Shown here piece after piece: positions 2,401 to 21,461 of a stretch of 64,000 bases of DNA; the first letter of the stretch is position 1, and each line of letters opens with the position of its first letter. Made by a program: the position numbers and the translations under genes. The notes under the pieces were generated by a model that worked only from the letters and a program-made list of their open reading frames with translations, had not been told where the DNA came from and did not search any database. The stretch lies in IMG/VR virus record IMGVR_UViG_3300040801_004532, positions 184,137 to 248,136 of that record; one strand, written 5' to 3'.

Positions 2401-2777
2401 CAGTTATAAATGATATTTTGAAAGAAATGAAAACAACAGATCTGACCCAACAGGTCAGACAATTTTGTGATATAATAACAAAAGAAGAAAGAGAAAAATT
2501 TAAAAATCCGGAACTATTACCGAGAGGTGCCAATGTTTTCCTTTCAATTGAAGTACCAGGGAGAAGCGATAAGGAAATCGGTTTTTTAACATTAGAACGT
2601 GAAGGAGAAGAAGACTATTTAATTGTCTATCATACCCTGGAAAAATATAGAGTTTCATCTGATCCAGAGAATATGATACCACCAAGACGAAGAAAAGTAT
2701 GGGCAGTTAATGAAAACAAGGCTGAAAAAATTTTAACCCAGTTTGCTAAAACCGTGAAACTTTTAAGAGGTGAATAA
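2397..2777 (+). CDS. Hypothetical protein
   Basis: ATGA overlap with upstream gene, SD-like GGGTGAG, abuts next gene. Confidence 0.6.
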   Translation: MTVINDILKEMKTTDLTQQVRQFCDIITKEEREKFKNPELLPRGANVFLSIEVPGRSDKEIGFLTLEREGEEDYLIVYHTLEKYRVSSDPENMIPPRRRKVWAVNENKAEKILTQFAKTVKLLRGE

Positions 2778-5351
2778 ATGAAAGATGTTCTGTTAGGTAC
2801 TTCGAATCTAGGAGAAAATCGAGCAGTTGAAGAGATAAGGATTAGCCCAAATTATGCAAATCTGATAATATCAACATTCGAAGGTACAAAGGAGGATGAT
2901 TCTACCCCAGCTATTAAACGAAAAACTATATTCACTAAAGATTATATTTCCAAATTAAATGAGTCAAATAAATTATTTACTGGAAATGTTATGCCTCCGA
3001 ATTGCAGATATATAGAACCAATCAACAGAGGGGTCATTGCAGTTATTGAAGAACCCCCTTCATTTAGGACAATTTTTGTTGATAGAGACCTCCGGGAGGA
3101 ATTTAATGTATTATCAAAACAAGGACGCTTGGATGAATATGAAATACCAAAGAATTTCTTAGAGAAAAACAGACAACCATACTACCTTAATTTAGCAATA
3201 CCTTATACCATCTTTCTTATGTGGATAACGGAATATTTCAGCGTTGGAATAACTGAAGTATATTTTCGTACAAATCAATTGATGGGTCTTTCAGACAACC
3301 TTCTTTTAGCTCCATTTTTAAATATACCAACTGAGCAACGAATTTGCTATCAATCTGGAAATAAATGTATATCCCTAACTGCAGCTATACAACAAGGGAT
3401 TAAGGCCTTTTGGGAATCAACATTTAACTCAGATTATACACACAATTATGAAAGTTATAAAGAAACCCCAGTCGTTGGAAATTATCTTGAATGGCAAGCT
3501 ATGTCTAAAATAAATCCATTGTTTATCTATAACGCAGACTGGCAAGTTAGGCCTTATAATTTAGGTCAAAGAATTAACAATTTAATTGAGCAGGCAGGAG
3601 GAAGGTCAAAAAATAAATTCGGTTATGCAGAACTTGCTGACTTATTTTATTCAAGACTAGATTCAGGCGTTGATATAAAACCTTCTCCAAGATCTAAAAA
3701 TAAATATAGATTGTTTTTTGATATAGCAAATAGTCTATATTTAGATGATATACTTCATATTGAAGTTGGCGATACATTTAAAACACATGATGGAAAGATA
3801 GCATATATTGACTCTCTTGCTGGATTTTCAGATGGGAGCGAAATTAAATATATCCAAATAGATATTAATGGAAAAAAACATCTGATGAAATATACAAAGG
3901 AATGTAAAAAATTCCTTTTTGATAAAGTAAAAGAAGACCGATTTGCCAAAGAATATACGTTATCAAATGGCCAGGTGATTAAGGAAGGTGATATACTTAT
4001 TATAAAACCAACTAAATCTATGGAAATTTTCAGACGAGTTGAATATATAAGAAAAAGCCGTGGCCTTGAAGAAGATGCAGAAATAAGAGTTGGTCGAAAT
4101 TATTACCTTGCATCAAGATTAAAAGCTGAAAAGTTAGATGCTGATGAACCCATATATAAAGGTGTAAAACTAATAAAAGATAAAGAGTATATTATCTCTA
4201 CTGGTGGAGGTGGTATATTTTCTGAGGGTTATAGATGTAAATTTGAAAAACTTGATGCTCACAGAGATTCGTTAGTAGCATCATTTATTCAAAGTGGGGG
4301 ACGAAGACGAACTCTAAACCTGTCGGTTCCAAGACAAACCCAACTAGCTTATCCACTTGATCAAACTAAGCCACTTAAGACAGGAATCTCAAAAATAGGG
4401 AGAAAAGTCTTCACAGTAACTAAAAATGGATCTCATCCAAGCAAAGAAGGAATGTGGCAAGTGGGTCCATCTCTAATATTTGACGGCAGTTATGCAGTAA
4501 ATGCTTTAACTGTTGGGGATTTTATTAAAGAACTATATGATGACGATAAATTTCATATATCCGGGGTAGATTTTGATATTGATTTTGCAATTGGTGAAAA
4601 GGTTGTCGTAGCCAATTGGGAAGACCCCCTTTCTGTTCTATCTGTAAAAACTATTCAGGGGTTTAAGGAAACAGATAATCATTTCGATTTTGTCCTTTCA
4701 GATAAAGCAGGCAATTTAACAACAGAGCAATTTATTGATCCCCAATCAAATATCTATTCTGGCAAAATTAGAAAGGTTACAAATAAATGGGGACGATTAT
4801 CAGTTGGTACAAAAATTATTGCTGATGTACCAGGAATCCCCAACTTTCCGAAGAAGGACGTAAATATTATTGTTGCTTTCATTATTGATATACCAGACGA
4901 ACCGTTAGTATTGTGTTCAAATGGTTGTACGTTATGGTATAACGATGTCGTAGAAAAATTTAAGAAGATAAAGATGGGATCAAAACAATGGGAAAAGCTA
5001 CAACATGTTCCCCTAGATTTATCAAAGATTAAATTTCAGGCAGGGGATGTGGTTAACGGATTCTCTGACTTTAGAGAGTCTGGTGGATACCTTTTATATG
5101 ACCCATCACCAACCAGATCACTGAAAGCAATGCCAATGAATGTTATGCATATTGGAGACGAAGGATATCATTATGTTGCTGATAAATATTTTATGAATGA
5201 TATGATTTTCGATTGTATTCCAGCTCCAAGAGTCGCAACAACTAAAGTTGCCGATTCTGATATAGTTAAGGGATATTTAAATATTAATAGTTACCAGATT
5301 GAAGAAGATGATAGTTCAATATTTTCATTTCTGAAACCAAAGGAGAATTAA
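2778..5351 (+). CDS. Prokaryotic E2 family D (PRTRC protein B-like) domain fused to about 600 aa of beta-rich, possibly SH3/KOW-like, repeats
   Basis: IEEPPSFRTIFV, LAIPYTIF, LLLAPFLNI..ICY and FWESTFNSD resemble Prok-E2_D. Lies directly upstream of JAB and ThiF genes. Confidence 0.65.
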   Translation: MKDVLLGTSNLGENRAVEEIRISPNYANLIISTFEGTKEDDSTPAIKRKTIFTKDYISKLNESNKLFTGNVMPPNCRYIEPINRGVIAVIEEPPSFRTIFVDRDLREEFNVLSKQGRLDEYEIPKNFLEKNRQPYYLNLAIPYTIFLMWITEYFSVGITEVYFRTNQLMGLSDNLLLAPFLNIPTEQRICYQSGNKCISLTAAIQQGIKAFWESTFNSDYTHNYESYKETPVVGNYLEWQAMSKINPLFIYNADWQVRPYNLGQRINNLIEQAGGRSKNKFGYAELADLFYSRLDSGVDIKPSPRSKNKYRLFFDIANSLYLDDILHIEVGDTFKTHDGKIAYIDSLAGFSDGSEIKYIQIDINGKKHLMKYTKECKKFLFDKVKEDRFAKEYTLSNGQVIKEGDILIIKPTKSMEIFRRVEYIRKSRGLEEDAEIRVGRNYYLASRLKAEKLDADEPIYKGVKLIKDKEYIISTGGGGIFSEGYRCKFEKLDAHRDSLVASFIQSGGRRRTLNLSVPRQTQLAYPLDQTKPLKTGISKIGRKVFTVTKNGSHPSKEGMWQVGPSLIFDGSYAVNALTVGDFIKELYDDDKFHISGVDFDIDFAIGEKVVVANWEDPLSVLSVKTIQGFKETDNHFDFVLSDKAGNLTTEQFIDPQSNIYSGKIRKVTNKWGRLSVGTKIIADVPGIPNFPKKDVNIIVAFIIDIPDEPLVLCSNGCTLWYNDVVEKFKKIKMGSKQWEKLQHVPLDLSKIKFQAGDVVNGFSDFRESGGYLLYDPSPTRSLKAMPMNVMHIGDEGYHYVADKYFMNDMIFDCIPAPRVATTKVADSDIVKGYLNINSYQIEEDDSSIFSFLKPKEN

Positions 5352-7057
5352 TGTTTACAGTATTCGTGAATGATGGCACACAGGAAATGCCAGACGATGA
5401 TATTATGTATATTGTTGGGAAAGAGGGTATATTCCTAAAGAAAAAAATGGGAATTATGGAAAGCATTGCTCCCGTTAAAAACATTTCTATTCTAGAGAGT
5501 GTCGGTTCAATGGCGAAAATGCATATTCCGCCCATTCCTGGTCCAACATTTGCAAAGGCGGTTTCCTTTTTCAGAGAAGTTTATAAAGAACATTTTGGAG
5601 AGTCGATTGTTCTTATATTCTTCAATGAAAAAAGTGGAAGATATAAATTATTTCCGCCACATCAAAAGGTTACATCTGCATCATTAGATTACAATAGAGG
5701 CATTACCATCGAAGGATGGACTATGGTTGGAACAATTCATAGTCATGGAGGTATGTCAGCATTCCATTCGGGTGTTGATGATGATGATGAAAAAACATTC
5801 GATGGATTGCATATTACAGTTGGAAATGTAAAAGATGAGGATGTAAGCATCTCTGCATCTATTGTATCCAACGGCTATCGCTTTATGATTGAACCAGAAG
5901 AATATATAAAGCAAGTCAAAAAGACAAAAGAAATTGATGAAGAAAGAACAAGCTATTCAACCAAAGTTTATAAATATGATCCAGTTCAAAAGAAAACTGT
6001 GCTTGATGTAGAGGCAAGCAAAAAAAGAGCCTATAGCTGGAGAAAATATGATAAACGATATAGAGTTATGGTTCCCGAAAGCAAAAGCAAACATCCAGAA
6101 ACATGGATGAACAATGTTGAAAAGGGGACTTATGCCTACAGACGTGGTGGATATTACGGCGGTTATTACGGCAATTATGGGGGATGGGGACATCATTACG
6201 ATAGAAGTGCATGGGGTCAAAGATTCCTGCCTGCCAAAACCCCTACCCAGACAACAAAACCAGGATCACCTCCGTTAAATGTTGGTCCATCGGCCAATGT
6301 AAAACCCGTTGAATTTCCAACTCATGATATACCAGTAGACCCAGATATGCCTTGCCTTACATGCAAGCATAGAGAGTGTAAAATTCTGGGTGAAGCAGAA
6401 GACGAATTTGATGAAGATTTTTATAAATGCGAGAACTGTGGTACCATATACCATGGTGAAATTGATATTTGCGATAAGTGCAATACAGATGATCATTTAA
6501 TTCTTATTGAGGCCAAAGATATGAAAGACCTATATGAGCCTCTTGTTCTTGATGAAATTGACAGAGATGCAGCTATAGCAGCACAACCAGATCAGCTTGG
6601 CTTTACATCATGCCCAGTTTGCAAAAGCGTATTTATGCGATTGGAAACTGATGACGAATGCCCATTTTGTAGTGCAGCGCTTGAAGGAGACAATGAATTA
6701 TTAACAAAACAAGTCGAATGCCCGTGGTGCTATCAAGGGGTATATGAAACAAAATTAGATCATCAACGACGGTGCCCATATTGCCGAAATGAAATCCCTT
6801 TGGATGCCAAACTTTTGACCATAGGATTTGATCCAGATGATGAAATTGAAAATCATATGAGATCTGATTCCGGGCCAGAAGATGAACAATCTGAAGATTT
6901 TCATGAAGAGGTCTTGCGTCAAGCTAAGCAAGCCGACGAATCAATCGAACGAATCCCCGATCCCAGTAAATCTGAAATTCCTATTTCATCCAGATTTACA
7001 GCTAAAAGGATCAAAGATATGATGCGTAAAGCATTTAGGGGGAAAGGTCATGCCTGA
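5351..7057 (+). CDS. JAB/MPN+ metalloprotease (Prok-JAB, PRTRC protein A-like) with Gly/Tyr-rich linker and multiple CxxC zinc ribbons
   Basis: JAMM motif GTIHSHGGMSAFHSGVD (HxH-x7-S-x2-D), DGLHITVG. C-terminal half has CENC/CDKC, CPVC/CPFC and CPWC/CPYC pairs. Confidence 0.85.
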   Translation: MFTVFVNDGTQEMPDDDIMYIVGKEGIFLKKKMGIMESIAPVKNISILESVGSMAKMHIPPIPGPTFAKAVSFFREVYKEHFGESIVLIFFNEKSGRYKLFPPHQKVTSASLDYNRGITIEGWTMVGTIHSHGGMSAFHSGVDDDDEKTFDGLHITVGNVKDEDVSISASIVSNGYRFMIEPEEYIKQVKKTKEIDEERTSYSTKVYKYDPVQKKTVLDVEASKKRAYSWRKYDKRYRVMVPESKSKHPETWMNNVEKGTYAYRRGGYYGGYYGNYGGWGHHYDRSAWGQRFLPAKTPTQTTKPGSPPLNVGPSANVKPVEFPTHDIPVDPDMPCLTCKHRECKILGEAEDEFDEDFYKCENCGTIYHGEIDICDKCNTDDHLILIEAKDMKDLYEPLVLDEIDRDAAIAAQPDQLGFTSCPVCKSVFMRLETDDECPFCSAALEGDNELLTKQVECPWCYQGVYETKLDHQRRCPYCRNEIPLDAKLLTIGFDPDDEIENHMRSDSGPEDEQSEDFHEEVLRQAKQADESIERIPDPSKSEIPISSRFTAKRIKDMMRKAFRGKGHA

Positions 7058-7736
7058 AAACCTAAATATTGTTATAATAGGGCTGGGAGGTATTGGTTCT
7101 GTTTTATCAGAAAGATTAAGTCGATTTCTAAATTATAATAGAGAATTGAAAACAAATATACTATTAGTTGATGGTGATTCATACGAGCCAAAAAATCAAG
7201 ATAGACAAGATTTCCTACAATTCGGAAACAAAGCCGAAATTAAGGCTGATGAATTAGCGATGAAATTTGGCGAGATTGAATTTGATGCCGTTGGTGAATA
7301 TATAAACGACGGCAATATTTCAGAAACAATACGGGATGGAGACATTATCTTCATTTGTGTTGACAATCACAAATCCAGAATGATAATTAACAATTACTGT
7401 AAAACTTTAACCAATGTTATTTTAATTTCTGGTGGGAATGAGCTTACAGATGGAAATGCACAACTTTATGTCAGAGAAGGAGGTGTGGATAAAACTCCCG
7501 ACTTGTGTACATACCATCCAGAGATAGCAAATCCCGACGATAAATTACCCGAAGAAATGTCTTGTGAAGAATTATCCCAGTCAGAGCCACAGTTGTATTT
7601 TACAAATCTAGGAGTGGCTACTCTTATGTGTTGGATGTTTTATAATGCGTTTGTCAATAAAGTATATGATAGATCCGAAGCTTATTTCGATATTCTTACA
7701 ATGTCTGCAGACTCCAAAATCCGAGTTACAAAGTGA
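7050..7736 (+). CDS. ThiF/E1-like adenylating enzyme (PRTRC ThiF-like)
   Basis: IIGLGGIG Rossmann loop, VDGDSYEPKNQDRQ, CVDNHKSR, SGGNE, candidate catalytic Cys in MSCEE, QLYFTN. Confidence 0.9.
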   Translation: MPENLNIVIIGLGGIGSVLSERLSRFLNYNRELKTNILLVDGDSYEPKNQDRQDFLQFGNKAEIKADELAMKFGEIEFDAVGEYINDGNISETIRDGDIIFICVDNHKSRMIINNYCKTLTNVILISGGNELTDGNAQLYVREGGVDKTPDLCTYHPEIANPDDKLPEEMSCEELSQSEPQLYFTNLGVATLMCWMFYNAFVNKVYDRSEAYFDILTMSADSKIRVTK

Positions 7737-7788
7737 ATTGTGAATCTCGGATCAACCAAACTTTTTCTTTCGAAGGGAGAAATGAACA

Positions 7789-8262
7789 ATGGGTGCAACT
7801 TTTACTCGTGATCAACTGGAAGTCAAGACCGCAGTCGAACTGAAACGTATGTGCGTGGACGAGCTGGGAATCCCCGGGATGACCAAAAAGCCGAAGGCCG
7901 TGGTCATCAACGCAATCATGGAAAAATTCGGGACCAGAACCGTGGCCTCCGGCGGCACCATCTCCAAAGATGGTGGCAAAATGACCGGAATGGAATGGCA
8001 GGCCCGAAGTGTCATGACCAAACCGGGTGCTCCTACCGGTGCCAAAACAACCACAACCATCCATGTTTCCTGCGGTGCCTCCGCCGGGAATTTCCCCGTA
8101 GCGGGCCGCAAGGTTTCCGAAGTCGGGGAATTCCTCCGGGAAGTTCTGAACGTGGATCGCCTATCGACCGGCCTGGTCAACGGCCATGAAGTCGACGCCG
8201 GCTATGTCCTGAAACCCGGCGACAATCTCGAGTTCCTCAAACCGGCAGGTAAAAAGGGATAA
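7789..8262 (+). CDS. Ubiquitin-like (beta-grasp) modifier with N-terminal Rho-N/HEH-like helical domain
   Basis: N-terminal LEVKTAVELKRMCVDELGIPGMTKKPKAVVINAI is Rho_N-like. C-terminal IHVSCG..VAGRKVSEV..LNV..LVNG..VLKPGDNLEFLKPAGKKG is beta-grasp-like with a terminal Gly. Confidence 0.8.
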   Translation: MGATFTRDQLEVKTAVELKRMCVDELGIPGMTKKPKAVVINAIMEKFGTRTVASGGTISKDGGKMTGMEWQARSVMTKPGAPTGAKTTTTIHVSCGASAGNFPVAGRKVSEVGEFLREVLNVDRLSTGLVNGHEVDAGYVLKPGDNLEFLKPAGKKG

Positions 8263-8289
8263 ACTGCCATATTAAGCAGTATGTTAGAA

Positions 8290-8309
8290 GGGGGGCCTCC
8301 GGGCCCCCC
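8290..8309 (+). terminator. GC-rich hairpin with UNCG tetraloop after the Ubl gene (attenuator or mRNA stabiliser)
   Basis: GGGGGGCC-TCCG-GGCCCCCC 8-bp stem with only a weak U tract. A second small stem ACTGC..GCAGT lies at 8263-8280. Confidence 0.55.
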
Positions 8310-8337
8310 AATCTTAAAAAAGAGAGGAAATGTATTA

Positions 8338-9234
8338 GTGCTTCGTAAAGTGACAGTAATTGGACTTGGAACTCTTGGTGGGTTCCTTTGCAAGCACATA
8401 TCAGAACTAGAGAATATAAAAGAAATGGTTATCGTTGATAATGATATTGTGGAAAGCAAAAATGTTTTCTCATCTATTTACAAATATTCTCACATTGGCG
8501 AATATAAGGTCGACGCTCTAAAGGAAATAATTGAGGACGATGTTGCTGTCACAATCAGGAAACAAGATTATAGAGAAGGAAGTACAATTTTACCACTCAG
8601 CGATCTAGTAATTGATTGTCGTGATGTGGTTTGTGATAGAAAAGGCGAAATTGATGTAAGATTATTTATATCAGAAAGAATTCTTATTTTCGATTGTAGA
8701 AAATTTGTCAGAAATACTTGTAGTTATGATGGTAGTTATTCTTTAAAATTGAACAAAAGCGAAATAAACAAAGCAGCCTTTTTCGCTGCTCAAATAATAA
8801 ATAGCGAAGAACTCCCCGATATGATAAAAAATAATATGGTTCAAAGAATTGATTTAAATCTATTGCCATCTGTAATGAGCAGAGCAATAAGAAGAACCCT
8901 TGAAAATAAGATAGATATAATTTATGATCTAACAGAGAATGCAAGAAGGTTACATTGCATTGATGAAAATATCCGACCAATCTTAACATTAAATAAACAA
9001 AAAGATACAAAAGTTTTTGTTGGTACAAGGGATGATACCAGAAAATTTCCAGAGGTAATAACGAGCAAGTATCAAATAATACCACAAAATTCATTAAAAG
9101 ATTCTTTCGATGTAATTCAAAAGTTAACTGAAGTTGTTCAAAGACAACCAGGCGTAAGAAATTTCATAGTTACAGTAAGGAGCGAAAATGGGGAAGATTT
9201 TGTCGAGTTACTGGAAGAAACAGGAGCCGCGTGA
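8338..9234 (+). CDS. Second ThiF/E1-like Rossmann protein, truncated fold plus unknown C-terminal domain
   Basis: VIGLGTLGG, VDNDIVESKN, YKVDAL, DLVIDCRD. Likely start is GTG 8338 after SD GAGAGG, because the track start at 8281 runs through the hairpin. Confidence 0.7.
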   Translation: MLRKVTVIGLGTLGGFLCKHISELENIKEMVIVDNDIVESKNVFSSIYKYSHIGEYKVDALKEIIEDDVAVTIRKQDYREGSTILPLSDLVIDCRDVVCDRKGEIDVRLFISERILIFDCRKFVRNTCSYDGSYSLKLNKSEINKAAFFAAQIINSEELPDMIKNNMVQRIDLNLLPSVMSRAIRRTLENKIDIIYDLTENARRLHCIDENIRPILTLNKQKDTKVFVGTRDDTRKFPEVITSKYQIIPQNSLKDSFDVIQKLTEVVQRQPGVRNFIVTVRSENGEDFVELLEETGAA

Positions 9235-9661
9235 ATTTATCGAAGATCGAATAACAATATGGGGGTATAACCCACACCTACCAGTAGTTGAAGAAGCCCA
9301 TGTATACGAAGGCATAATTGTTCCTGATAGGATGATAAAAGACAAAAATGTTTATCAGATTGTACAATTAGACGAGCTTTATTATATAAACGGTTTCGTA
9401 GTAATAACAGAAAATGAGTTAGTTAAAAATGTAATTTTATTTGGTTATCATCCAAATCGAGATCCAGAAACACATCTATATTGTTTACCCGACAGAAAAA
9501 AGAATATTAAATTTACACAAGAATATTTTAGTTTGTTGATGACTAACATCAAGACATATTATCTTGATGATTGCTTTTATATGCCCGGCAAACATCAGGT
9601 CAAATATAAAAAATTAAAGTCGTTGTATGTTCAAATGAACGAAGGAGAAAAACATGGATGA
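9188..9661 (+). CDS. Putative E2/UBC-like conjugating protein
   Basis: FGYHPNRDPETHLYCLP matches the E2 active-site pattern HPN-x(7-8)-hydrophobic-C-L. Lies at the end of the E1/JAB/Ubl operon. Start uncertain. Confidence 0.55.
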   Translation: MGKILSSYWKKQEPREFIEDRITIWGYNPHLPVVEEAHVYEGIIVPDRMIKDKNVYQIVQLDELYYINGFVVITENELVKNVILFGYHPNRDPETHLYCLPDRKKNIKFTQEYFSLLMTNIKTYYLDDCFYMPGKHQVKYKKLKSLYVQMNEGEKHG

Positions 9662-9878
9662 AGAAAAGAATAATATAATGGAAGACTATATAAGGTCCTT
9701 GATTAAAGATGAGTTAAAAAACATAGATGTAATATTAAAAAAGGAAGAAGCCAATGAAATAGTAAAGGCAATTATGCCACAATTAGATAGCTTAATAGCA
9801 GATCGTATAAAGCTGCATTTTTCAGAGCTGGCGAAAATGGTCCAGCAAAAATTTGGTGGAAGTGACAAAGGAGAGTAG
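9654..9878 (+). CDS. Small helical hypothetical protein immediately upstream of beta'
   Basis: SD GAAGGAG, overlaps upstream stop, ends 3 nt before rpoC. Confidence 0.6.
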   Translation: MDEEKNNIMEDYIRSLIKDELKNIDVILKKEEANEIVKAIMPQLDSLIADRIKLHFSELAKMVQQKFGGSDKGE

Positions 9879-9881: not shown

Positions 9882-12548
9882 ATGCCAAAGTTATTGGATT
9901 ATTCTGCATTTTGTGAAAACCTAGAGGAAGTTTCCTCTCTAAAAGTGTTTGGAAAGAAAAAGTTTCATCCACATGGTCTGTTCTCCGAGCAAATTTTCGG
10001 CCCGATAAAAAATTATACTTGCCAATGTGGCATCTATTATGGAATTTCTAAATCGGGCGGTAAATGCGACCTTTGTGGGGTCGATATTGTTAATAGTGAT
10101 GAACGAAGAAAAAGATTTGCAAAAATCAAAATACCAATACCAGTTGTCAATCCAATCTTTTATGATTTGCTTGCAGAGATTGGAGGAAAAACATTAAAGC
10201 ATGCAATTGATGAATTGATGCGTAATGACAAAAGCTTCCTTTATATGGATGGCGGTGAGCATATTATCAGCACAGATGAACCCCCAGATGGAGTACGAAT
10301 ATACGAAAGAACAGATGCAATAATGAAGCTAGTGAGTGATCTAGCAAATCTGTTTGCAAACGATGGGGTAGAAGAATGGAAATTAATTACAAACAATATA
10401 GATAGCCTTTTGATAAACCAAATAATCGTTTTACCTCCGGATCTCAGACCAACATCTGCTTCTGGTGGCGGTAAACATTTGATGGATAAAATCAATAGGT
10501 ATTATGTTCAGATATTAACAAAGAAAGAAATTATGAAAGATACAATGCTTGATATTATACGAGACAAGAAATTATATTATACCTACTTCAAGCAATTGCA
10601 GAAAGATGTAAATGAATTATACCATCGTATATTAGAAAAGATGGCTAAAAAAGAAGGGTTGATCAGAGGAAACATTTTGGGGAAACGAATTGATTTCTCC
10701 GGTAGAGCAGTCATTACTCCTGATCCAACCCTCAACCTTGATGAGTGTGTTTTACCATATACAATGGTTCTGGAGATATTTAAACTTCCGATTGCAAAAC
10801 GAATCATTCAGCTTGGTAAATTTAAACTATTGAATAAAGCTATTGATTTTGTTGATAGATGTATTGAAACAAATTCTCCAGTATTATGCAAAATCTGTGA
10901 AGAGATAACCAAAGATGAGGTATGTATTCTAAACCGTCAACCATCTCTTCATAAACTTGGAATGCTTGGATTTAATATTAAACTAACATTGGATAAGGTT
11001 ATAAAAATACATCCGCTTGTTTGTCCTCCATTCAATGCAGATTTCGATGGAGATCAAATGGCAGTTTATATCCCAATTACAGAAGAAGCAAAACAAGAAG
11101 TTCGTGAAAAAATGTTTGTTACAAAAAATCTAAGTAGTCCGGCAAATGAGGGGTTGACAACAACACCGAGTCAAGATGTAATCCTTGGTATTTATTTTAT
11201 CACATCAGAAGATTATCCAGATCGAGAAGAAGGTTTTAAAATTTTCAATGACTGTCTGCCTTCTGATTATCCAGAAATAAAAGAAATCATAAATAAAAAT
11301 AAATTGATGGTTATTTTAAATGATATTAAAGATAGATATCCAGAAAACACAACAATGAAAGTACTAGATTCAATTAAAAGAGTTGGTTTCAAATATGCAA
11401 CTCTTTTAGGTTCAACAATGTCACTTGATGATTTTGATATTGCTGGCGTCGAAAAAGTGAAGAGTGATATATTTGGAAAAGATGATGTAAGAGAGCAATT
11501 AACCGCTTTTTCTAATCCAGAAGTAACCAGTTTTCTAAAAGATAATTTTCCATATGCTTACATGATCGAATCTGGAGCAAGAGGAAGCTGGGATCAAGCC
11601 AAACAGCTAATATTGGCAAGAGGGTTCATCTCAAATTTTGAAGGCGAAATTCTTCCTGTACCGATTAAACATAGTTTGGTTGAAGGGTTAACTCAAGAGG
11701 AATTCTTTTATTCAACATATGGATGTAGAAAAGGTCTTCTTGATGTTGCGTTGAATACAGGTACAAGCGGATACTTATCTAGAAAATTAATTTTTACATG
11801 TGCGAACCTTCAACTAGATGAAGGACTTGATGATTGCGGAACAACTGACCTATTAGAAGTCGATGTTAAAAACGAAAGAAAAGCAAGAATGTTAGTTAAT
11901 CGCTATTATCTAAATGGCGGAAAACTAGTAAAAATTACACCAGATAACTATAAAGATATAGTTGGAAAAACAATTGAAATAAGAAGTCCGATTTTATGTA
12001 ACTCGCCAAAACTTTGCAAGATTTGTTACGGCGATCTTCATAAAAAATTAAACAGTAGGTTTGTTGGAATCATTGCAGCTCAAACATTGGGCGAGCGAGG
12101 AACTCAGCTTGTATTAAGAACCTTTCATACATCTGGTTCAGCGATTATCAAAGGGGTCGATGATTATAAAGATCAATCAATGAGACAAAGTGATATTATT
12201 GGAGATCTTGCATCGGTCGCAAGGATGCTACATAAATTTACAGGCAAGACATACGTTCAAATAGTAGACGAATTATTTGAGGTTTACAATAAAGATATTT
12301 ACCATGTCCATTTTGAATGTGTAGTTGCACAGCTAATGTGGCACAATAATAAAAAGTGGAGATTATTGAAAAATAGAGATACGGTAAAACCAACGTATTA
12401 TAGTATTCAATCAGTGCCAAATCAAGAGAGTTGGATATTGGCAATGGCATTTTCAAACCCCAAGCGTAGCATTTTACGGGGTATTGTATATGAAGGTAAA
12501 TATTCAGGGATAATGGACAAAATTCTCAAAGGAGAAAAAATTGAATGA
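9882..12548 (+). CDS. rpoC: DNA-directed RNA polymerase beta' subunit (phage-encoded, compact, unsplit)
   Basis: HGLFSEQIFGP, Zn site CQCG..CDLCG, LGKRIDFSGRAVI, LNRQPSLH, catalytic FNADFDGD, SGARG, SGYLSRKL, TQLVLRTFH. Confidence 0.97.
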   Translation: MPKLLDYSAFCENLEEVSSLKVFGKKKFHPHGLFSEQIFGPIKNYTCQCGIYYGISKSGGKCDLCGVDIVNSDERRKRFAKIKIPIPVVNPIFYDLLAEIGGKTLKHAIDELMRNDKSFLYMDGGEHIISTDEPPDGVRIYERTDAIMKLVSDLANLFANDGVEEWKLITNNIDSLLINQIIVLPPDLRPTSASGGGKHLMDKINRYYVQILTKKEIMKDTMLDIIRDKKLYYTYFKQLQKDVNELYHRILEKMAKKEGLIRGNILGKRIDFSGRAVITPDPTLNLDECVLPYTMVLEIFKLPIAKRIIQLGKFKLLNKAIDFVDRCIETNSPVLCKICEEITKDEVCILNRQPSLHKLGMLGFNIKLTLDKVIKIHPLVCPPFNADFDGDQMAVYIPITEEAKQEVREKMFVTKNLSSPANEGLTTTPSQDVILGIYFITSEDYPDREEGFKIFNDCLPSDYPEIKEIINKNKLMVILNDIKDRYPENTTMKVLDSIKRVGFKYATLLGSTMSLDDFDIAGVEKVKSDIFGKDDVREQLTAFSNPEVTSFLKDNFPYAYMIESGARGSWDQAKQLILARGFISNFEGEILPVPIKHSLVEGLTQEEFFYSTYGCRKGLLDVALNTGTSGYLSRKLIFTCANLQLDEGLDDCGTTDLLEVDVKNERKARMLVNRYYLNGGKLVKITPDNYKDIVGKTIEIRSPILCNSPKLCKICYGDLHKKLNSRFVGIIAAQTLGERGTQLVLRTFHTSGSAIIKGVDDYKDQSMRQSDIIGDLASVARMLHKFTGKTYVQIVDELFEVYNKDIYHVHFECVVAQLMWHNNKKWRLLKNRDTVKPTYYSIQSVPNQESWILAMAFSNPKRSILRGIVYEGKYSGIMDKILKGEKIE

Positions 12549-15544
12549 AAATAGTCAATCCTACCTACAAAATTCAGGATGAAGACAATAGCATCTTCAC
12601 TCTGAGAAAACGGGACTACGAAAATATTTTACCCTTAGCGAGACAAATTCTTGAACCAGTAAGAGAAATTGGTTTCGAAATTACAGAACTTGAACTAAGA
12701 GATTCAAGATTTTCTTCCGGTGAACTTTCAAGAACGATAAAGCAAACTCTTGTTATTCGCCTTCAAAAAGGAACCTCAAATATTGATCTTTCAATATTCG
12801 TTCCAAAATTAGTTGACGACAATTATATATTTATCAATGGAAGGAAAAAGATTCCGTTATTTCAATTATTTGATATTCCTGTTGTAACAAGGGGCGAGTC
12901 GATAAAATTAAGAACTAATGTAGCAACATTGATGGTGGTTGTAGAAAAAGAGGAACCAAAAATTAATATAAGTTTTCTCGGAAAGAAAGTGCCTCTATCA
13001 TTATTGATGTTAGCATATTATGGCCCAGAAGTACTAAACAAACGATTTAATTTATCACAGTTCAATATAAAAGATACAAGTAATTTAATGGAGTTGTTAA
13101 TCGAAGATATAAAACTATTTTGGATTGAGTCAAAGGGTTATACCCAAGATGATTTTATAGTTGAATTAGGACGCGATTATTCAAGATATAATGCAAAATC
13201 AAAGGGCGAAGATGTTGTATATGCCCTAGATTTGATTCCAAAAATTGATCCAATCACAGCTCAATTTTTACAAACCGGATCAATTATCGAAGAGTTATTA
13301 TTGGCATTACAAACAGGCGATATAGATGATACGTTATTTACAAATAAGAGAATTAGATGTTTTGAATATATGATCTTTTCTAAACTATCTAAAATTGTTT
13401 TCGATCTTTGTTTTTCAAACAGGACAAGCAGACAACCAAAATTCAACATTAACTCAAATCAAATTATTTCAGAATGTAATGTTTCAGATATTGTTCAGTT
13501 TGATTTTTCAATCAACCCAATTGAAGAATTAACTAAAATGTCAAGAGTTAGTCTTTTGGGTCCAGGCGGATTTAAAAGAGAAAACATTCCAAGGCATTTA
13601 CGAGATATTTGCCCGTCGATGTTTGGACGGATTTGTCCGGTTGATACACCAGATCGTGATAATTGTGGTGTATTGCAAAATTTTGTTTCAAATGTGAAAC
13701 TTGAGGAAAACATGAGGTTCTCAGAGGAAATCTCTGAACAACCAATATCAATTCCTGTTTCGATGGTTCCGTTCTTGAAGAATGATGATCCAACCAGATT
13801 ACAAATGGCATCATCACAAATGAGACAGGCGATTCTTTTAAAAGATTTTGATGAACCCATGATAAAATCTGGATGTGAGGGACTATATACAGACAAAACC
13901 CAATTTGTCAAAAAGGCGAAGAAAAATGGGGAAGTGATCCACGTTGACAACAAGTATTTAATTGTAATCTATGATGATGGTGAAGCAGAAATCTTTGACA
14001 TAATGTATCGAAAAATTTATGTTGAGCACATGGATTTTATGAATATCTATGTCAAAGCGGGTGACAAGTTCAAGGCTGGGGATATACTTGCTGAAAGTAA
14101 TTTTTGTAAAGATGGAAATATATGCTTTGGAAAAAATCTCTTGACAGGAGTTATGGTTTACTACGGTAATAATTATGAAGATGGAATTGTTGTTTCAGAT
14201 AGACTTGTTAATGAAGATGTTTTAACATCAGTACATTTTAAAGATCTATCATTTACACTACCACCAAATAAGGTCTTGTTATCATTACAAGAAGGAAGAT
14301 ACAAGCCGTTGCCGAAAGCTCTGGAACAATTAAGCGCAGGGTCTCCTTATGCAAAGATAAAAACTCTTTCTACCGATGATATGTATTCTGTATTTTCAGA
14401 AGAAATTTCATTGGAAGCTGAAAAATCATTTATTATTCCTGAGGTAAATATCTATGCAAATACATGGAATGATGAAATTCCTGAGTTCAATGACTGGATT
14501 GAAAAGACAGTCAGTGAACAACAAGAGCGAGATGCAGGATTAAGAAAAATTATAAAGGACAAACTTCCATCCGAAATATCTAAGAAATTCATTAAGGAAA
14601 GCGGATTGGAACTGTCTTCATTTGTTGGAAAGTATAAAATGAAGCGAGAAAAAATAAACGGCATCCATATTGAAATGTATGGTATTCACTTTAGAAAAAT
14701 AAAAGTGGGTGATAAAATAGCGAACAGGCATGGAAATAAAGGAGTTATTTCCAGAATTGTTCCTCATGAAAAGATGCCAAAATTAGAAGATGGAAGACAT
14801 CTTGATATCTGCATCAATCCATTGGGTATTATCTCAAGAATGAACATCGGACAGTTGTTCGAATTGCAATTATCAATGTCTTTATATGATTTACAACAGA
14901 CATTGCTAAAAATGATTAACGAAGAAAAACCCCAAGACGAGATTAAAAAATATCTTATGGGGTATATAAATACTGTGGATAAAACAAAAACCGGATGGTA
15001 TTCAGAGCAATTTGAGAATCAATTACCAAAAGAAATCACAAACGAATTTGTTGCAACCTTAGTTTTAATTCAACCACCTTTTGAGTCATGTAAATTAGAT
15101 GATATTAAAAAGGCTCTTGAATATACCGGTACCGAATTTAAACAAAAGGTTTATGATCCGTTATCAAAAACCTATTTTAAAAATCCCATTGCTGCAGGTT
15201 ACATTTATTTCCTAAGGATGGTTCATATTGCAGAAGAAAAATTAGCAGCGAGAGGCATTGGAGCATATGCAAAAAGAACCCTTCAACCATTAGGGGGAAG
15301 GAAAAATAAAGGTGGCCAAAGATGCGGCGAAATGGAAACAGCTTGTATTATTGGTCATGATGCACCAATAAATCTATTTGAATTTCTTACTACAAAATCT
15401 GACTGTATAGATTTGAAAAATTTGTACATCAGGAAGTTTATTGATCCAAATTTAGTTGACGAAAGTAAAGAGGTTGATTCCATTCCGGAATCTGTAAAAT
15501 TGTTAAATGCGTACTTAACAGTTATTGGAGTAAAACAAAAATGA
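12545..15544 (+). CDS. rpoB: DNA-directed RNA polymerase beta subunit (phage-encoded, unsplit)
   Basis: GRICPVDTPDRDNCG, MASSQMRQA, NYEDG, GDKIANRHGNKGVIS, INPLGIISRMNIGQ, GGQRCGEME. ATGA overlap with rpoC. Confidence 0.97.
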   Translation: MKIVNPTYKIQDEDNSIFTLRKRDYENILPLARQILEPVREIGFEITELELRDSRFSSGELSRTIKQTLVIRLQKGTSNIDLSIFVPKLVDDNYIFINGRKKIPLFQLFDIPVVTRGESIKLRTNVATLMVVVEKEEPKINISFLGKKVPLSLLMLAYYGPEVLNKRFNLSQFNIKDTSNLMELLIEDIKLFWIESKGYTQDDFIVELGRDYSRYNAKSKGEDVVYALDLIPKIDPITAQFLQTGSIIEELLLALQTGDIDDTLFTNKRIRCFEYMIFSKLSKIVFDLCFSNRTSRQPKFNINSNQIISECNVSDIVQFDFSINPIEELTKMSRVSLLGPGGFKRENIPRHLRDICPSMFGRICPVDTPDRDNCGVLQNFVSNVKLEENMRFSEEISEQPISIPVSMVPFLKNDDPTRLQMASSQMRQAILLKDFDEPMIKSGCEGLYTDKTQFVKKAKKNGEVIHVDNKYLIVIYDDGEAEIFDIMYRKIYVEHMDFMNIYVKAGDKFKAGDILAESNFCKDGNICFGKNLLTGVMVYYGNNYEDGIVVSDRLVNEDVLTSVHFKDLSFTLPPNKVLLSLQEGRYKPLPKALEQLSAGSPYAKIKTLSTDDMYSVFSEEISLEAEKSFIIPEVNIYANTWNDEIPEFNDWIEKTVSEQQERDAGLRKIIKDKLPSEISKKFIKESGLELSSFVGKYKMKREKINGIHIEMYGIHFRKIKVGDKIANRHGNKGVISRIVPHEKMPKLEDGRHLDICINPLGIISRMNIGQLFELQLSMSLYDLQQTLLKMINEEKPQDEIKKYLMGYINTVDKTKTGWYSEQFENQLPKEITNEFVATLVLIQPPFESCKLDDIKKALEYTGTEFKQKVYDPLSKTYFKNPIAAGYIYFLRMVHIAEEKLAARGIGAYAKRTLQPLGGRKNKGGQRCGEMETACIIGHDAPINLFEFLTTKSDCIDLKNLYIRKFIDPNLVDESKEVDSIPESVKLLNAYLTVIGVKQK

Positions 15545-21424: not shown

Positions 21425-21461
21425 GAGAGGGGGGTTTGGAACCCCCCCTCTCATTTTTTTT
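21425..21461 (+). terminator. Rho-independent terminator ending the left operon
   Basis: GAGAGGGGGGTT-TGG-AACCCCCCCTCTC followed by A and T8. Confidence 0.85.

What the first reader, a model, noticed from the sequence alone, without database searches (positions are those of the whole stretch)
2778..9661. Complete ubiquitin-like conjugation operon in a jumbo phage, directly upstream of its RNA polymerase
Seen: six co-oriented, mostly overlapping genes: E2-D-like, JAB with intact JAMM motif, ThiF/E1, a Ubl ending in KG, a second ThiF-like gene and an HPN..C E2-like gene. They run without an obvious strong terminator into rpoC-rpoB. Known: JAB + E2-D + ThiF + KG-ending Ubl is the core of PRTRC-type cassettes on bacterial mobile elements, and E1/E2/JAB modules act in CBASS and Bil anti-phage defence. 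Inference: this is a phage-owned writer/eraser system with extra parts (second E1-like, Cys-type E2, fused domains) and no ParB in the window. It could tag phage RNAP or host proteins, or counter host Ubl-based defences. This is the best candidate for an undescribed system here.
Basis: partly seen in the sequence, partly recalled or inferred. Interest (0 to 1): 0.92.

Follow-up and report, generated by a model that had tools for sequence, protein, structure and literature searches.

The report
Phage-borne ubiquitin-like tagging gene cassette
A large clade of uncultivated jumbo phages carries, next to its own RNA polymerase genes, a conserved gene set for activating, transferring and trimming a small ubiquitin-like protein; it is a distant, elaborated relative of a never-characterised cassette of bacterial mobile elements, and its targets are unknown.

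Summary
The genes are real and conserved. The window is part of a 248-kb IMG/VR myovirus-type contig. At least 125 viral contigs carry relatives, and about 70 of the 80 examined keep the order g1-g2-g3-g4-g5-g6-(g7)-rpoC-rpoB, with dN/dS of 0.07-0.25.

Four calls hold:
- g1 has an N-terminal Prok-E2_D domain whose invariant Cys190 aligns with the PRTRC-B cysteine.
- g2 is a JAB peptidase with an intact JAMM motif, followed by zinc ribbons.
- g3 is an E1 with every adenylation motif invariant.
- g4 is a Rho_N/HeH domain fused to a ThiS-type beta-grasp that ends in an invariant xKG.

About a quarter of g4 homologues carry one or two extra C-terminal residues. Relatives include 2-4x tandem "poly-Ubl" proteins. 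Both point to peptidase processing at the glycine.

g5 is a second E1-like protein that lacks the NxxRQ arginine. g6 has an invariant HPN...C motif, but a confident model finds no E2 fold, so that call is unproven.

A conserved GC-rich hairpin follows g4, so the cassette is not one seamless unit. g5 and g6 occur only where the RNA polymerase genes follow.

The E2-D/JAB/E1/Ubl core also sits in mobile elements of candidate-phyla-radiation (CPR) and other bacterial genomes. It is a distant relative of PRTRC, below all PRTRC cutoffs and without ParB. Verdict: a new variant of a known but uncharacterised kind.

The parts
2778..5351 (+). g1, 857 aa. The N-terminal ~260 aa form a Prok-E2_D-type E2-like domain; the invariant Cys190 codon is 3345-3347, in the motif P-x-x-N-I-x5-I-C-F/Y-G. 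The following ~600 aa are a conserved beta-rich extension of unknown fold, proposed as the substrate-recognition part.
   Evidence: Pfam Prok-E2_D 22.8 bits at residues 171-243. PRTRC_B E 0.015. hhalign to Ralstonia PRTRC-B E 5e-4 with the cysteines aligned. The g1 profile hits short 220-250-aa E2-D proteins in MAG cassettes, one of which Pfam assigns to Prok-E2_D. No PDB sequence relative. Invariant columns.
5351..7057 (+). g2, 568 aa. JAB/JAMM metallopeptidase in residues ~1-200 (E84 at 5600-5602; H130-S-H-x7-S-x2-D143 at 5738-5779). A low-complexity Gly/Tyr-rich linker and three or more CxxC...CxxC zinc ribbons follow (6353-6487, 6611-6670, ~6716-6790). The ribbons vary in number between relatives.
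   Evidence: Prok-JAB 25.5 bits. PRTRC_A 3.7e-10 at residues 19-175. Alignment A7 invariants. Weak zinc-ribbon similarity to RpoM, E 0.05. Coordinates checked.
7050..7736 (+). g3, 228 aa. E1-like adenylating enzyme of the ThiF/MoeB family with all nucleotide-binding motifs invariant: GLGGxGS 7080-7100, DGDxYExKNxxRQ 7170-7208, K61, CVDNHKxR 7356-7379. Candidate thioester cysteines are C153 (7506-7508, near-invariant) and C172 (7563-7565, invariant). It has no CxxC zinc site and no rhodanese domain.
   Evidence: ThiF 62.9 bits. PRTRC_ThiF 1.2e-10 over the full length. PDB profile hits to UBA5, MoeB, Uba4 and ThiF. Alignment A4.
7789..8262 (+). g4, 157 aa, the ubiquitin-like protein. It has an N-terminal Rho_N/HeH three-helix domain (7801-7932), a variable linker, and a 72-aa ThiS-type beta-grasp (8044-8259) ending in the invariant P-A-G-K/R/S-K-G. 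It has a strong Shine-Dalgarno site and the highest GC3 in the window (0.63, against a median of 0.25).
   Evidence: Alignment A1. Pfam on 17 members: TGS 17/17, ThiS 13/17, Ub-Mut7C 10/17, Rho_N 14/17 with best E 2e-8. The profile finds 1290 clusters, including tandem poly-Ubl proteins that hit Pfam ThiS at 1.3e-18. AlphaFold pLDDT 69 with a beta-alpha-beta-beta C-terminal domain. Foldseek is not significant. Composition.
8290..8309 (+). Perfect 8-bp all-G/C hairpin with loop TCCG, directly downstream of the Ubl gene. It is probably an RNA 3'-end, stabiliser or attenuator element that separates g1-g4 from g5-rpoB.
   Evidence: A stem of at least 7 bp is present in 61 of 69 distinct relatives, with different (covarying) stem sequences. 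Mean MFE is -24.0 against -10.5 for shuffles; only 8 have a U-tract. It is one of only two such hairpins in the 64 kb.
8281..9234 (+). g5, 317 aa from ATG 8281; relatives indicate the start is GTG 8338 (298 aa). It is a second E1-like Rossmann domain (GxGTLGG, D53xD55, K76, D112-C-R) in which the arginine of the NxxRQ motif is absent. A ~200-aa domain of unknown fold follows, with a near-invariant C-terminal tail E-T-G-A-A (9217-9231). It is specific to this clade.
   Evidence: ThiF 37.2 bits at residues 23-116. The best PADLOC hits are the E1 part of CBASS Cap2. The alignment to MoeB shows the missing arginine. Alignment A3. The tail is ETGAA in 47 of 75 relatives. No beta-grasp signal in the C-terminal domain. 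263 clusters, all 283-325 aa.
9188..9661 (+). g6, 157 aa. A small protein with invariant H88-P-N90 (9449-9457) and C99 (9482-9484), plus a near-invariant D-D-C (9566-9574). The topology is a beta-meander, then the HPN loop, then Cys, then a helix. E2-like by motif only; the fold is not matched to any known structure.
   Evidence: Alignments A2 and A5. AlphaFold core pLDDT above 90. Foldseek PDB best E 2.1 and BFVD best E 0.19; a viral E2 appears at rank 3 with E 0.49. No E2 Pfam family among 118 members. 182 clusters, all unannotated.
9654..9878 (+). g7, 74 aa. A helical small protein translationally coupled between g6 and rpoC. Its function is unknown; it is present in most relatives.
   Evidence: Synteny. 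No family hit. dN/dS 0.20.
9882..15544 (+). Context: rpoC-like (beta', 888 aa, 9882-12548) and rpoB-like (beta, 999 aa, 12545-15544) phage multisubunit RNA polymerase genes. They are contiguous with g5-g6-g7.
   Evidence: Pfam RNA_pol_Rpb1 and Rpb2 domains. Conserved adjacency in about 70 of 80 viral loci.

Best explanation
g1-g4 form a phage-owned ubiquitin-like protein conjugation module. It is a distant, elaborated relative of the E2-D / JAB / ThiF / Ubl cassette of bacterial mobile elements (PRTRC type; operon type 6d of Iyer et al. 2006).

Proposed steps:
1. The HeH-Ubl fusion g4 is made in large amounts. The signs are a strong ribosome-binding site, atypical GC-rich codons and a 3' hairpin.
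2. Where the Ubl carries extra C-terminal residues or is a tandem repeat, the JAB peptidase g2 trims it to expose the terminal glycine. The same peptidase later removes conjugates.
3. The E1 g3 adenylates that glycine with ATP. It probably passes the Ubl through a cysteine (C153 or C172) to Cys190 of the E2-D domain of g1.
4. The 600-aa extension of g1 chooses the target, so that g1 works as an E2/E3 hybrid, and the Ubl is attached to a target lysine.
5. The HeH/Rho_N domain of the Ubl gives the tag, or its delivery, an affinity for nucleic acid. Targets are therefore likely to be DNA- or RNA-associated proteins of phage or host.

g5, g6 and g7 are clade-specific additions expressed with the RNA polymerase genes. 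g5 may act as a non-catalytic partner of g3, giving a split E1 like the IAD/AAD arrangement. g6 may act as a cysteine-based transfer protein.

Shown here: gene identities, motifs, conservation, processing-type C-termini, distribution and the hairpin. Inferred: every chemical step, the direction of transfer, the targets, and the roles of g5 and g6.
For: The gene order E2-D, JAB, ThiF is the same as PRTRC B-A-ThiF in Ralstonia pRI-1.

The Ubl family is ThiS-like: plus weak PDB hits to SAMP2 and PF1061.

The Ubl ends in an invariant glycine. 21 of 80 homologues carry 1-2 extra residues after it. Relatives include 2-4x head-to-tail poly-Ubl proteins in which every repeat ends G-x-K-G. One of these is encoded directly beside E2-D, JAB and ThiF.

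The four-gene core recurs in 35 MAG loci, with E2-D proteins from 220 aa to about 1000 aa. One locus has two giant E2-D paralogues, which fits variable target-recognition extensions.

All genes have dN/dS of 0.07-0.25.

No rhodanese, desulfurase or PP-loop partner lies within +/-10 kb.

Experimentally proven bacterial E1/E2/JAB/Ubl pathways (Bil, type II CBASS, Bub) do conjugate proteins, and in Bil the E2 is proposed to pick the target without an E3 (PMC11601596).
Against: No biochemical result exists for any PRTRC-type cassette.

The window's own g1 and g4 fall below Pfam cutoffs; their assignment rests on profiles and transitive links.

The g4 model is only moderately confident (pLDDT 69), and Foldseek gives no significant beta-grasp hit.

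The downstream histidine described for type-6d E2-like proteins is not conserved in g1.

g3 lacks the N-terminal arginine-finger helix of MoeB-type E1s.

JAB + E1 + Ubl trios also serve sulfur transfer in other systems.

No target is known.
Confidence: 0.6

Rival explanations
1. Sulfur-carrier pathway. g4 is thiocarboxylated by g3, as ThiS, MoaD, TtuB and CysO are. It then donates sulfur for a nucleic-acid or cofactor modification made by neighbouring genes (radical SAM 997-2061, FolE2 16003-16866). JAB only matures the carrier.
For: g4 is ThiS-like. JAB + E1 + ThiS/MoaD trios serve sulfur transfer in several bacterial pathways (PMC1779556). A radical SAM gene and FolE2 are syntenic with the cassette in the RNAP-adjacent clade.
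Against: The C-terminus is K-G, not G-G. No rhodanese, cysteine desulfurase or PP-loop thiolase lies in +/-10 kb. An E2-like protein with an invariant cysteine is always present. Tandem poly-Ubl forms and N-terminal HeH fusions are not features of sulfur carriers. The same core occurs in MAG loci without radical SAM or FolE2.
Confidence: 0.1
2. g5, g6 and g7 are not part of the Ubl system. They are accessory factors of the phage RNA polymerase, or of its assembly or regulation, and merely lie beside the cassette.
For: The conserved hairpin separates g4 from g5. Several relatives have an extra 0.6-0.7-kb gene inserted between g4 and g5. g5-g6-g7-rpoC-rpoB are overlapping or contiguous. g5 and g6 are absent from all cassettes that lack adjacent RNAP genes. 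g6 has no detectable E2 fold.
Against: g5 is clearly an E1-family Rossmann domain, a fold with no known role in RNAP. g6 carries the E2 signature HPN-x8-C, invariant in 118 sequences. No RNAP-subunit similarity is significant; the Rpb2 hits have E 3-9.
Confidence: 0.3
3. Counter-defence role. The cassette exists to neutralise host Ubl-based immunity (Bil, type II CBASS, Bub). It could deconjugate host tags with the JAB, flood the host enzymes with a decoy Ubl, or tag defence proteins.
For: Host E1/E2/JAB systems act against phages, and Bil tags a phage tail protein (PMC11601596). g5 resembles the E1 part of Cap2 most closely in PADLOC. The Ubl appears highly expressed.
Against: There is no specific similarity of g2 to Cap3 or BilC, nor of g4 to BilA. 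The same core is present in plasmid-like and integrated elements of CPR bacteria with small genomes. It is a strictly conserved core block rather than a variable accessory gene.
Confidence: 0.15
4. Non-conjugating, structural or chaperone use. g4 is an abundant nucleic-acid-binding protein, and its beta-grasp is only released or matured by JAB, as proposed for lambda tail-assembly protein I with protein K. The E1 and E2-like proteins have other substrates.
For: A Ubl + JAB pairing without conjugation was proposed for lambdoid tail assembly (PMC1779556). g4 has an HeH domain and expression signals typical of abundant proteins.
Against: The E1 with intact adenylation motifs and the Cys-bearing E2-D are strictly co-inherited with the Ubl across very distant cassettes. 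The terminal glycine is invariant.
Confidence: 0.08

Closest known systems
PRTRC cassette (ParB-related, ThiF-related cassette; NCBIfam TIGR03735-03738), equal to operon type 6d of Iyer, Burroughs and Aravind 2006
   Same: It has an E2-D-type E2-like protein with a conserved Cys, a JAB peptidase, a ThiF-type E1 and a small Ubl ending in K-G. The order E2-D, JAB, ThiF is the same as in Ralstonia pRI-1. It is carried by mobile elements. Its function has never been tested.
   Different: - All scores lie far below the PRTRC trusted cutoffs.
- No ParB or protein E was found.
- The Ubl follows the E1 instead of preceding the E2, and is of the ThiS type rather than Pfam Prok_Ub.
- The Ubl carries an HeH domain.
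- The E2-D protein has a 600-aa extension and the JAB has zinc ribbons.
- There is an extra E1-like gene and an HPN-Cys gene.
- It sits in a lytic-type jumbo phage next to RNAP genes.
Bil (BilABCD) anti-phage ubiquitination-like system
   Same: It has the same four roles of Ubl, E2, JAB and E1. The E2 is thought to choose targets without an E3. It pairs an active and an inactive adenylation domain (BilD IAD-AAD), which g3 + g5 could mimic as separate genes.
   Different: Bil belongs to the host and acts in defence. BilD is one chain with a mobile Cys domain. There is no significant sequence match apart from the generic ThiF domain (BilD E 0.0015). BilA is ISG15-like, whereas g4 is ThiS-like with an HeH domain.
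Type II CBASS Cap2/Cap3
   Same: It has an E1 domain plus a cysteine E2 domain and a JAB peptidase. The Rossmann part of g5 matches the Cap2 E1 best among defence models (PDB 7TO3 E 6.5e-8).
   Different: Cap2 is an E2-E1 fusion that conjugates the C-terminus of a CD-NTase. No CD-NTase or effector is present here. The gene order is E1 then the HPN-Cys protein, as separate genes.
ThiS/MoaD/SAMP/TtuB sulfur-carrier and archaeal SAMP systems
   Same: A beta-grasp with a C-terminal glycine is activated by a MoeB/ThiF-type E1. In some systems a JAMM peptidase matures or removes it.
   Different: The terminal dipeptide is K-G, not G-G. There are no sulfur-transfer partners. An E2-like protein is present. 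Tandem poly-Ubl relatives exist.
Bub (6E/DUF6527) operons
   Same: It is a bacterial Ubl pathway whose Ubls have 1-3 beta-grasp domains and varied N-terminal domains (PMC11601596). The BubCD E1 is a weak PDB hit.
   Different: Bub uses oxyester intermediates, lacks catalytic cysteines and has a DUF6527 serine protease. Here the cysteines are invariant and there is no DUF6527.

Membership tests
PRTRC system (NCBIfam TIGR03735/6/7/8) | Proteins A, B and ThiF reach the models' trusted cutoffs | tested here: not met
   PRTRC_A 39.7 bits against 101.8; PRTRC_B 14.7 against 131.45; PRTRC_ThiF 41.1 against 144.75.
PRTRC system (NCBIfam TIGR03735/6/7/8) | Protein C of the Pfam Prok_Ub type | tested here: not met
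   No Prok_Ub hit for g4. hhalign of A1 against Ralstonia PRTRC-C gives probability 0.2. Both do end in K-G.
PRTRC system (NCBIfam TIGR03735/6/7/8) | Associated ParB-family protein and protein E | tested here: not met
   tblastn of the Ralstonia PRTRC ParB and E proteins against the window gives only chance matches. The method has low sensitivity.
PRTRC system (NCBIfam TIGR03735/6/7/8) | Gene order B (E2-D), A (JAB), ThiF | tested here: met
   g1-g2-g3 against L021 B-A-ThiF.
Operon type 6d (Iyer et al. 2006) | E2-like protein with a conserved cysteine but without the classical HPN histidine | tested here: met
   Cys190 is invariant and aligned to the PRTRC-B cysteine.
Operon type 6d (Iyer et al. 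2006) | Absolutely conserved histidine downstream of the E2-like cysteine | tested here: not met
   No invariant His lies between C190 and residue 260 in A6. The conserved residues there are W212, F216, N217, D219, Y220 and N223. The feature is as described in PMC1779556.
Operon type 6d (Iyer et al. 2006) | Small Ubl with a conserved C-terminal glycine, with JAB adjacent to the E1 | tested here: met
ThiS/MoaD-type beta-grasp (Ubl) | Significant match to a beta-grasp family | tested here: met
   The window protein itself is sub-threshold. At family level, TGS matches 17/17, ThiS 13/17 and Ub-Mut7C 10/17 members. The profile links at E 8e-30 to P0130, which scores 67.8 bits on Pfam ThiS against a cutoff of 22.5.
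ThiS/MoaD-type beta-grasp (Ubl) | Beta-grasp three-dimensional fold | tested here: inconclusive
   AlphaFold pLDDT 69, with strand-helix-strand-strand order in the C-terminal domain. Foldseek best E 0.2. A TGS domain (3hvz) has TM 0.60 and TtuB (5ztb_D) 0.49, neither significant.
E1 adenylating enzymes (ThiF/MoeB, PF00899) | GxGxxG, D-x-D, NxxRQ arginine, lysine, and the D of the DxxDN motif | tested here: met
   g3: all are invariant, 62.9 bits. g5 passes the Pfam cutoff (37.2 against 28.1) but lacks the NxxRQ arginine.
JAMM/MPN+ metallopeptidases | E ... H-x-H-x7-S-x2-D motif | tested here: met
   E84, H130, H132, S140 and D143 are invariant in 17 sequences. Prok-JAB 25.5 bits against a cutoff of 25.
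Canonical E2/UBC (for g6) | HPN motif followed by the catalytic cysteine | tested here: met
   H88-P-N90 and C99 are invariant in 118 sequences. The motif is present in 67 of 74 further homologues.
Canonical E2/UBC (for g6) | UBC fold, or a match to an E2 family model | tested here: not met
   The model is confident (core pLDDT above 90). Even so, Foldseek PDB best E is 2.1, with the UEV domain of Tsg101 at E 9. In BFVD a viral E2 appears at E 0.49. There is no E2 Pfam family and no PDB sequence hit.
Bil (BilABCD) | Single-chain E1 with IAD-AAD-CYS, and BilA/BilB/BilC-type partners | tested here: not met
   PADLOC gives only a weak BilD hit on the ThiF domain (E 0.0015) and none for g1, g2, g4 or g6.
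Type II CBASS | CD-NTase plus a Cap2 E2-E1 fusion plus Cap3 | tested here: not met
   PADLOC hits are confined to the E1 domain of g3 and g5. No nucleotidyltransferase is found among the neighbours.
Sulfur-carrier Ubl pathways | C-terminal Gly-Gly and a sulfur-transfer partner (rhodanese, desulfurase or PP-loop enzyme) | tested here: not met
   The terminus is K/R/S-K-G. No such partner lies in +/-10 kb.

The most novel reading that the evidence does not exclude
This jumbo-phage clade runs a eukaryote-like, multi-part ubiquitination machine of its own. It would comprise a split E1 (active g3 plus a degenerate, IAD-like g5), two different cysteine carriers (the giant E2-D/E3 hybrid g1 and the minimal HPN-Cys protein g6, a new E2-like fold variant) and a JAB eraser. 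An abundant nucleic-acid-binding HeH-Ubl tag would be written onto transcription or nucleoid proteins, of the host or of the phage's own RNA polymerase, to re-programme gene expression during infection.
Probability: 0.12. Interest if true: 0.92.

Novelty: new variant of a known kind. Interest (0 to 1): 0.7.

Why it matters
All experimentally studied prokaryotic E1/E2/Ubl/JAB pathways (type II CBASS, Bil, Bub) are host defences against phages. Here the same chemistry appears to be owned by the virus, as a strictly conserved core block in at least 125 viral contigs.

It also gives the PRTRC-type cassette a tractable setting. That cassette was predicted in 2006 and is still uncharacterised. This setting offers clear processing-type Ubl precursors (KG-C ends and tandem poly-Ubl proteins), E2-D proteins with variable extensions that look like target selectors, and a Ubl fused to a nucleic-acid-binding domain.

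If conjugation is demonstrated, it would show that phages post-translationally tag proteins with Ubls. It would also open the question of what is tagged.

The g3/g5 pair could show how heterodimeric E1s arise. g6 could be either a very divergent E2 or a new fold that converged on the HPN-Cys motif.

Tried and rejected
- **DNA-level search:** blastn of the cassette against 50,697 phage records gave no match.
- **g6 as an E2:** PDB hmmsearch, Pfam on 118 members, Foldseek against PDB and Foldseek against BFVD gave no significant E2 match. Weak Rpb2 hits (E 3-9) were treated as noise.
- **g4 against PRTRC-C:** hhalign with a single template gave nothing.
- **g4 fold search:** Foldseek with the whole two-domain g4 model gave no significant hit.
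- **g5 C-terminal domain as a second Ubl or UFD:** the hand-read strand-strand-helix-strand-strand pattern and the conserved ETGAA tail suggested it. Pfam on 60 members gave no beta-grasp signal, so the idea is left open, not adopted.
- **u5 (2397-2777) as a second Ubl:** it ends in a conserved LRG(E) tail, but the alignment looks helical at the C-terminus and there is no family hit. It is not adopted.
- **g1 extension and g2 C-terminus:** no PDB relative for g1. g2 gave only generic zinc-ribbon similarity.
- **P0132:** this 3308-aa protein with 19 partial matches to the Ubl profile is a T9SS adhesin-like false positive.
- **Genes inserted between g4 and g5 in relatives, and the ~94-aa gene between E2-D and JAB in MAG cassettes:** no family.
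- **Vibrio phage D69:** the 229-aa gene upstream of JAB-ThiF shows the E2-D cysteine motif, but hhalign gives E 0.24, which is not significant.
- **Sigma-70 promoter scan:** no more matches than in shuffled sequence.

Full report
**What is there**

The + strand of window 2778-9878 carries seven tightly packed genes, followed by rpoC-like and rpoB-like genes.

| Gene | Coordinates | Length |
|---|---|---|
| g1 | 2778-5351 | 857 aa |
| g2 | 5351-7057 | 568 aa |
| g3 | 7050-7736 | 228 aa |
| g4 | 7789-8262 | 157 aa |
| g5 | 8281/8338-9234 | 317 or 298 aa |
| g6 | 9188-9661 | 157 aa |
| g7 | 9654-9878 | 74 aa |
| rpoC-like | 9882-12548 | 888 aa |
| rpoB-like | 12545-15544 | 999 aa |

The window is part of IMGVR_UViG_3300040801_004532, a 248,136-bp contig. 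It also encodes a large terminase, a tail sheath and a baseplate wedge. It is therefore a myovirus-type jumbo phage.

**Conservation**

A first scan found 18 related viral contigs with 48-71% identity in g3. They keep the order SbcC, u2, radical SAM, WYL_2, u5, g1 to g7, rpoC, rpoB, FolE2. A profile scan found 125 viral contigs. Of the 80 kept, about 70 show g1-g2-g3-g4-g5-g6-(g7)-rpoC-rpoB wherever the locus reaches that far. Pairwise dN/dS is 0.07-0.25 for all seven genes, although dS is close to saturation. The genes are real and under constraint.

**g1: the E2-D-like protein**

Pfam Prok-E2_D scores 22.8 bits on residues 171-243, just below the cutoff of 25. Three further lines support the call:
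- hhalign of the 15-sequence alignment against Ralstonia PRTRC protein B gives E 5e-4 and places the invariant Cys190 on the PRTRC-B cysteine.
- The g1 profile hits 220-250-aa proteins in other cassettes at E 1e-22 to 1e-27.
- One of those proteins is assigned to Prok-E2_D by precomputed Pfam.

The remaining ~600 aa are conserved but have no relative in PDB or Pfam.

**g2: the JAB peptidase**

Prok-JAB scores 25.5 bits and PRTRC_A gives 3.7e-10. E84 and H130-S-H-x7-S-x2-D143 are invariant. The C-terminal half holds a variable number of CxxC pairs, with only generic zinc-ribbon similarity.

**g3: the E1**

ThiF scores 62.9 bits and PRTRC_ThiF gives 1.2e-10 over the full length. GLGGxG, DGDxYExKNxxRQ, K61 and CVDNHKxR are invariant. 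Cys172 is invariant and Cys153 nearly so.

**g4: the Ubl**

The alignment shows a helical N-terminal domain, a variable linker and a 72-aa C-terminal domain with 83% mean column identity that ends P-A-G-(K/R/S)-K-G.

- Scanning all 17 members against Pfam gives TGS in 17, ThiS in 13 and Ub-Mut7C in 10. All three are beta-grasp families. Rho_N appears in 14, with best E 2e-8.
- A profile search of 1.84 billion representative proteins finds 1290 clusters at E <= 1e-3.
- These include stand-alone 68-77-aa proteins and proteins with 2-4 head-to-tail copies, each copy ending G-x-K-G.
- One tandem protein scores 67.8 bits on Pfam ThiS.

The AlphaFold model is moderate (pLDDT 69). Foldseek is not significant; a TGS domain and TtuB appear only among weak hits. 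I therefore accept "ThiS-type beta-grasp" on sequence grounds and call the fold test inconclusive.

Five of the first 19 homologues and 21 of the next 80 carry one or two residues after the glycine, mostly Cys. Together with the tandem forms, this is what a peptidase-processed modifier looks like.

**g5: the second E1-like protein**

g5 is an E1-family Rossmann domain (37.2 bits; MoeB 1.9e-11, Cap2 1e-8). It retains GxGxxG, D53/D55, K76 and D112 but lacks the arginine of NxxRQ. Its last ~200 aa have no relative. The tail E-T-G-A-A is nearly invariant.

**g6: the HPN-Cys protein**

HPN-x8-C is invariant in 118 sequences. The motif sits after a beta-meander and before a helix in a confident model, as it does in E2s. 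However, no E2 is recovered:
- Foldseek against PDB: best E 2.1.
- Foldseek against BFVD: a viral E2 at E 0.49.
- Pfam on the members: no E2 family.
- PDB sequences: no hit.

The E2 reading is a lead, not a finding.

g5 and g6 form families of 263 and 182 clusters respectively. All members come from this phage clade and none is annotated beyond ThiF.

**Operon structure**

g4 stands out in three ways:
- GC is 0.56 and GC3 is 0.63, against about 0.33 and 0.25 for its neighbours. It has the highest GC3 of any real ORF of at least 100 aa in the window.
- It has a consensus AAGGAG ribosome-binding site in nearly all relatives.
- A perfect 8-bp all-GC hairpin follows it at 8290-8309.

A hairpin with a stem of at least 7 bp lies within 70 nt of the g4 stop in 61 of 69 distinct relatives. 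The stem sequences differ between relatives. Mean MFE is -24.0 against -10.5 for shuffles, and only 8 have a U-tract. Only one other such hairpin exists in the 64 kb. Several relatives have an extra 0.6-0.7-kb gene between g4 and g5.

So g1-g4 and g5-g6-g7-rpoC-rpoB look like two expression units.

**Distribution of the core**

A scan of one genome per species found 35 loci, all in MAGs: CPR phyla, Planctomycetota, Lentisphaerota, Gammaproteobacteria and archaeal bins.

- Nearly all carry E2-D, JAB, ThiF and Ubl together.
- The E2-D proteins range from 220 aa to about 1000 aa.
- One locus has two giant E2-D paralogues, and another has the trio duplicated.
- g5 and g6 appear only in the three loci where RNAP genes follow.

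Contexts of the core:
- A Kaiserbacteria contig places it beside PIN/RelB and methyltransferase genes.
- A Saccharimonadia contig places it beside a serine recombinase and primase.
- A 9-kb contig has a 4x poly-Ubl next to E2-D, JAB, ThiF and a reverse transcriptase.

Among cultured viruses, Bacillus jumbo phages (WH1, KLEB27-3, Edson) and Vibrio phages D69, D181 and D148 carry ThiF relatives. A JAB-ThiF pair was confirmed in WH1 and in D69.

**Comparison with known systems**

The closest known kind is the PRTRC cassette, operon type 6d of Iyer et al. 2006 (PMC1779556).
- Same: the E2-D, JAB, ThiF order and a K-G-ended Ubl.
- Different: every PRTRC model is missed by a wide margin. The Ubl is not of the Prok_Ub type. 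No ParB or protein E is detected. The downstream histidine of type-6d E2-like proteins is not conserved.

It is therefore a relative, not a member.

Bil, type II CBASS and Bub are the tested analogues (PMC11601596). None matches beyond the shared E1 and JAB folds.

I found no mention of such a cassette in two jumbo-phage reviews or in full-text searches. The library does not cover all journals.

**Mechanism**

The most likely mechanism (confidence 0.6) is protein conjugation.
1. JAB exposes the glycine of g4.
2. g3 adenylates it.
3. The Ubl passes to Cys190 of g1.
4. The extension of g1 selects the target.
5. JAB reverses the mark.

The HeH domain points to nucleic-acid-associated targets. None of these chemical steps has been shown.

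The rivals are a sulfur-carrier role (0.1), a purely RNAP-related role for g5-g7 (0.3; not exclusive of the main explanation), a counter-defence purpose (0.15; compatible with the same chemistry) and a non-conjugating role (0.08).

**Verdict**

This is a real, strongly conserved, phage-owned variant of a known but untested cassette. Several unexplained additions remain. I score interest at 0.7.

Noticed in passing
window 7789-8262: g4 is a strong compositional outlier: GC 0.56 and GC3 0.63, against a window median GC3 of 0.25. The GC-rich sequence also creates long spurious antisense and alternative-frame ORFs (7812-8180 on the minus strand; 7851-8189). In relatives, g4 GC exceeds the locus GC by 0.1-0.2, but GC3 is raised only in some. 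The cause could be expression-linked codon choice, amino-acid composition or recent transfer; it is not resolved.
   Followed up: partly
window 9217-9231 (g5 C-terminus): g5 ends in a nearly invariant E-T-G-A-A tail (47 of 75 homologues; the others end TGGA, TGSA and similar). It follows a domain of unknown fold. A conserved small-residue tail on an E1-like protein is unexplained. It could be a docking peptide or a processed or activated end.
   Followed up: partly
window 2397-2777 (u5): The 126-aa gene directly upstream of g1 ends in a conserved K-x-L-R-G-E; in two relatives it ends at L-R-G. This is reminiscent of a ubiquitin tail, but the C-terminus looks helical and no family matches.
   Followed up: partly
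window 21425-21452: This is the only other perfect GC-rich hairpin in the window (10 bp). It is followed by a run of eight T, so it is a canonical intrinsic terminator. It lies after the unannotated 313-aa ORF at 20452-21393.
   Followed up: no
window 997-2061, 2065-2400, 16003-16866: A radical SAM gene, a WYL_2 (Sm-like SH3) gene and a type I GTP cyclohydrolase FolE2 flank the cassette and are syntenic across the clade. FolE2 suggests a 7-deazaguanine or folate-type pathway. No QueC, QueD or QueE was looked for.
   Followed up: no
window 9882-15544: The phage RNA polymerase large subunits are unsplit but short (888 and 999 aa) and are ordered beta' before beta. This differs from the split subunits of phiKZ-like jumbo phages (from my own knowledge; not tested here).
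   Followed up: no
L022:2690-8366: A 9-kb metagenomic contig encodes a 4x tandem poly-Ubl, then E2-D, a 93-aa protein, JAB and ThiF. Two genes further on there is a reverse transcriptase (RVT_1).
   Followed up: partly
L030:6349-15293 and L040:2-5868: One MAG locus has JAB-ThiF-Ubl followed by two giant E2-D paralogues (1007 and 989 aa). Another has the E2-D/JAB/ThiF trio duplicated in tandem. Both fit diversification of the target-selecting part.
   Followed up: no
L063:9210-9797, L092:4950-5366: In several relatives an extra gene of unknown family (195 aa or 138 aa) is inserted between the Ubl hairpin and g5.
   Followed up: partly
L142:4086-6849 (Vibrio phage D69) and L020:5384-7693 (Bacillus phage vB_BceM_WH1): Cultured large phages carry a JAB-ThiF pair related to g2-g3. 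In D69 the 229-aa gene just upstream shows the E2-D-like motif L-P-F-P-N-V...C-x-G, but not significantly. In WH1 a NADAR-domain gene follows the ThiF.
   Followed up: partly
L023, L029, L032 and other genome-contig loci: Contigs that carry this phage-type block (SbcC, radical SAM, cassette, RNAP) are deposited inside MAGs labelled Thermoplasmatales, Woesearchaeota, Falkowbacteria, Pacearchaeota or Thorarchaeota. These are probably phage contigs binned with cellular genomes.
   Followed up: no
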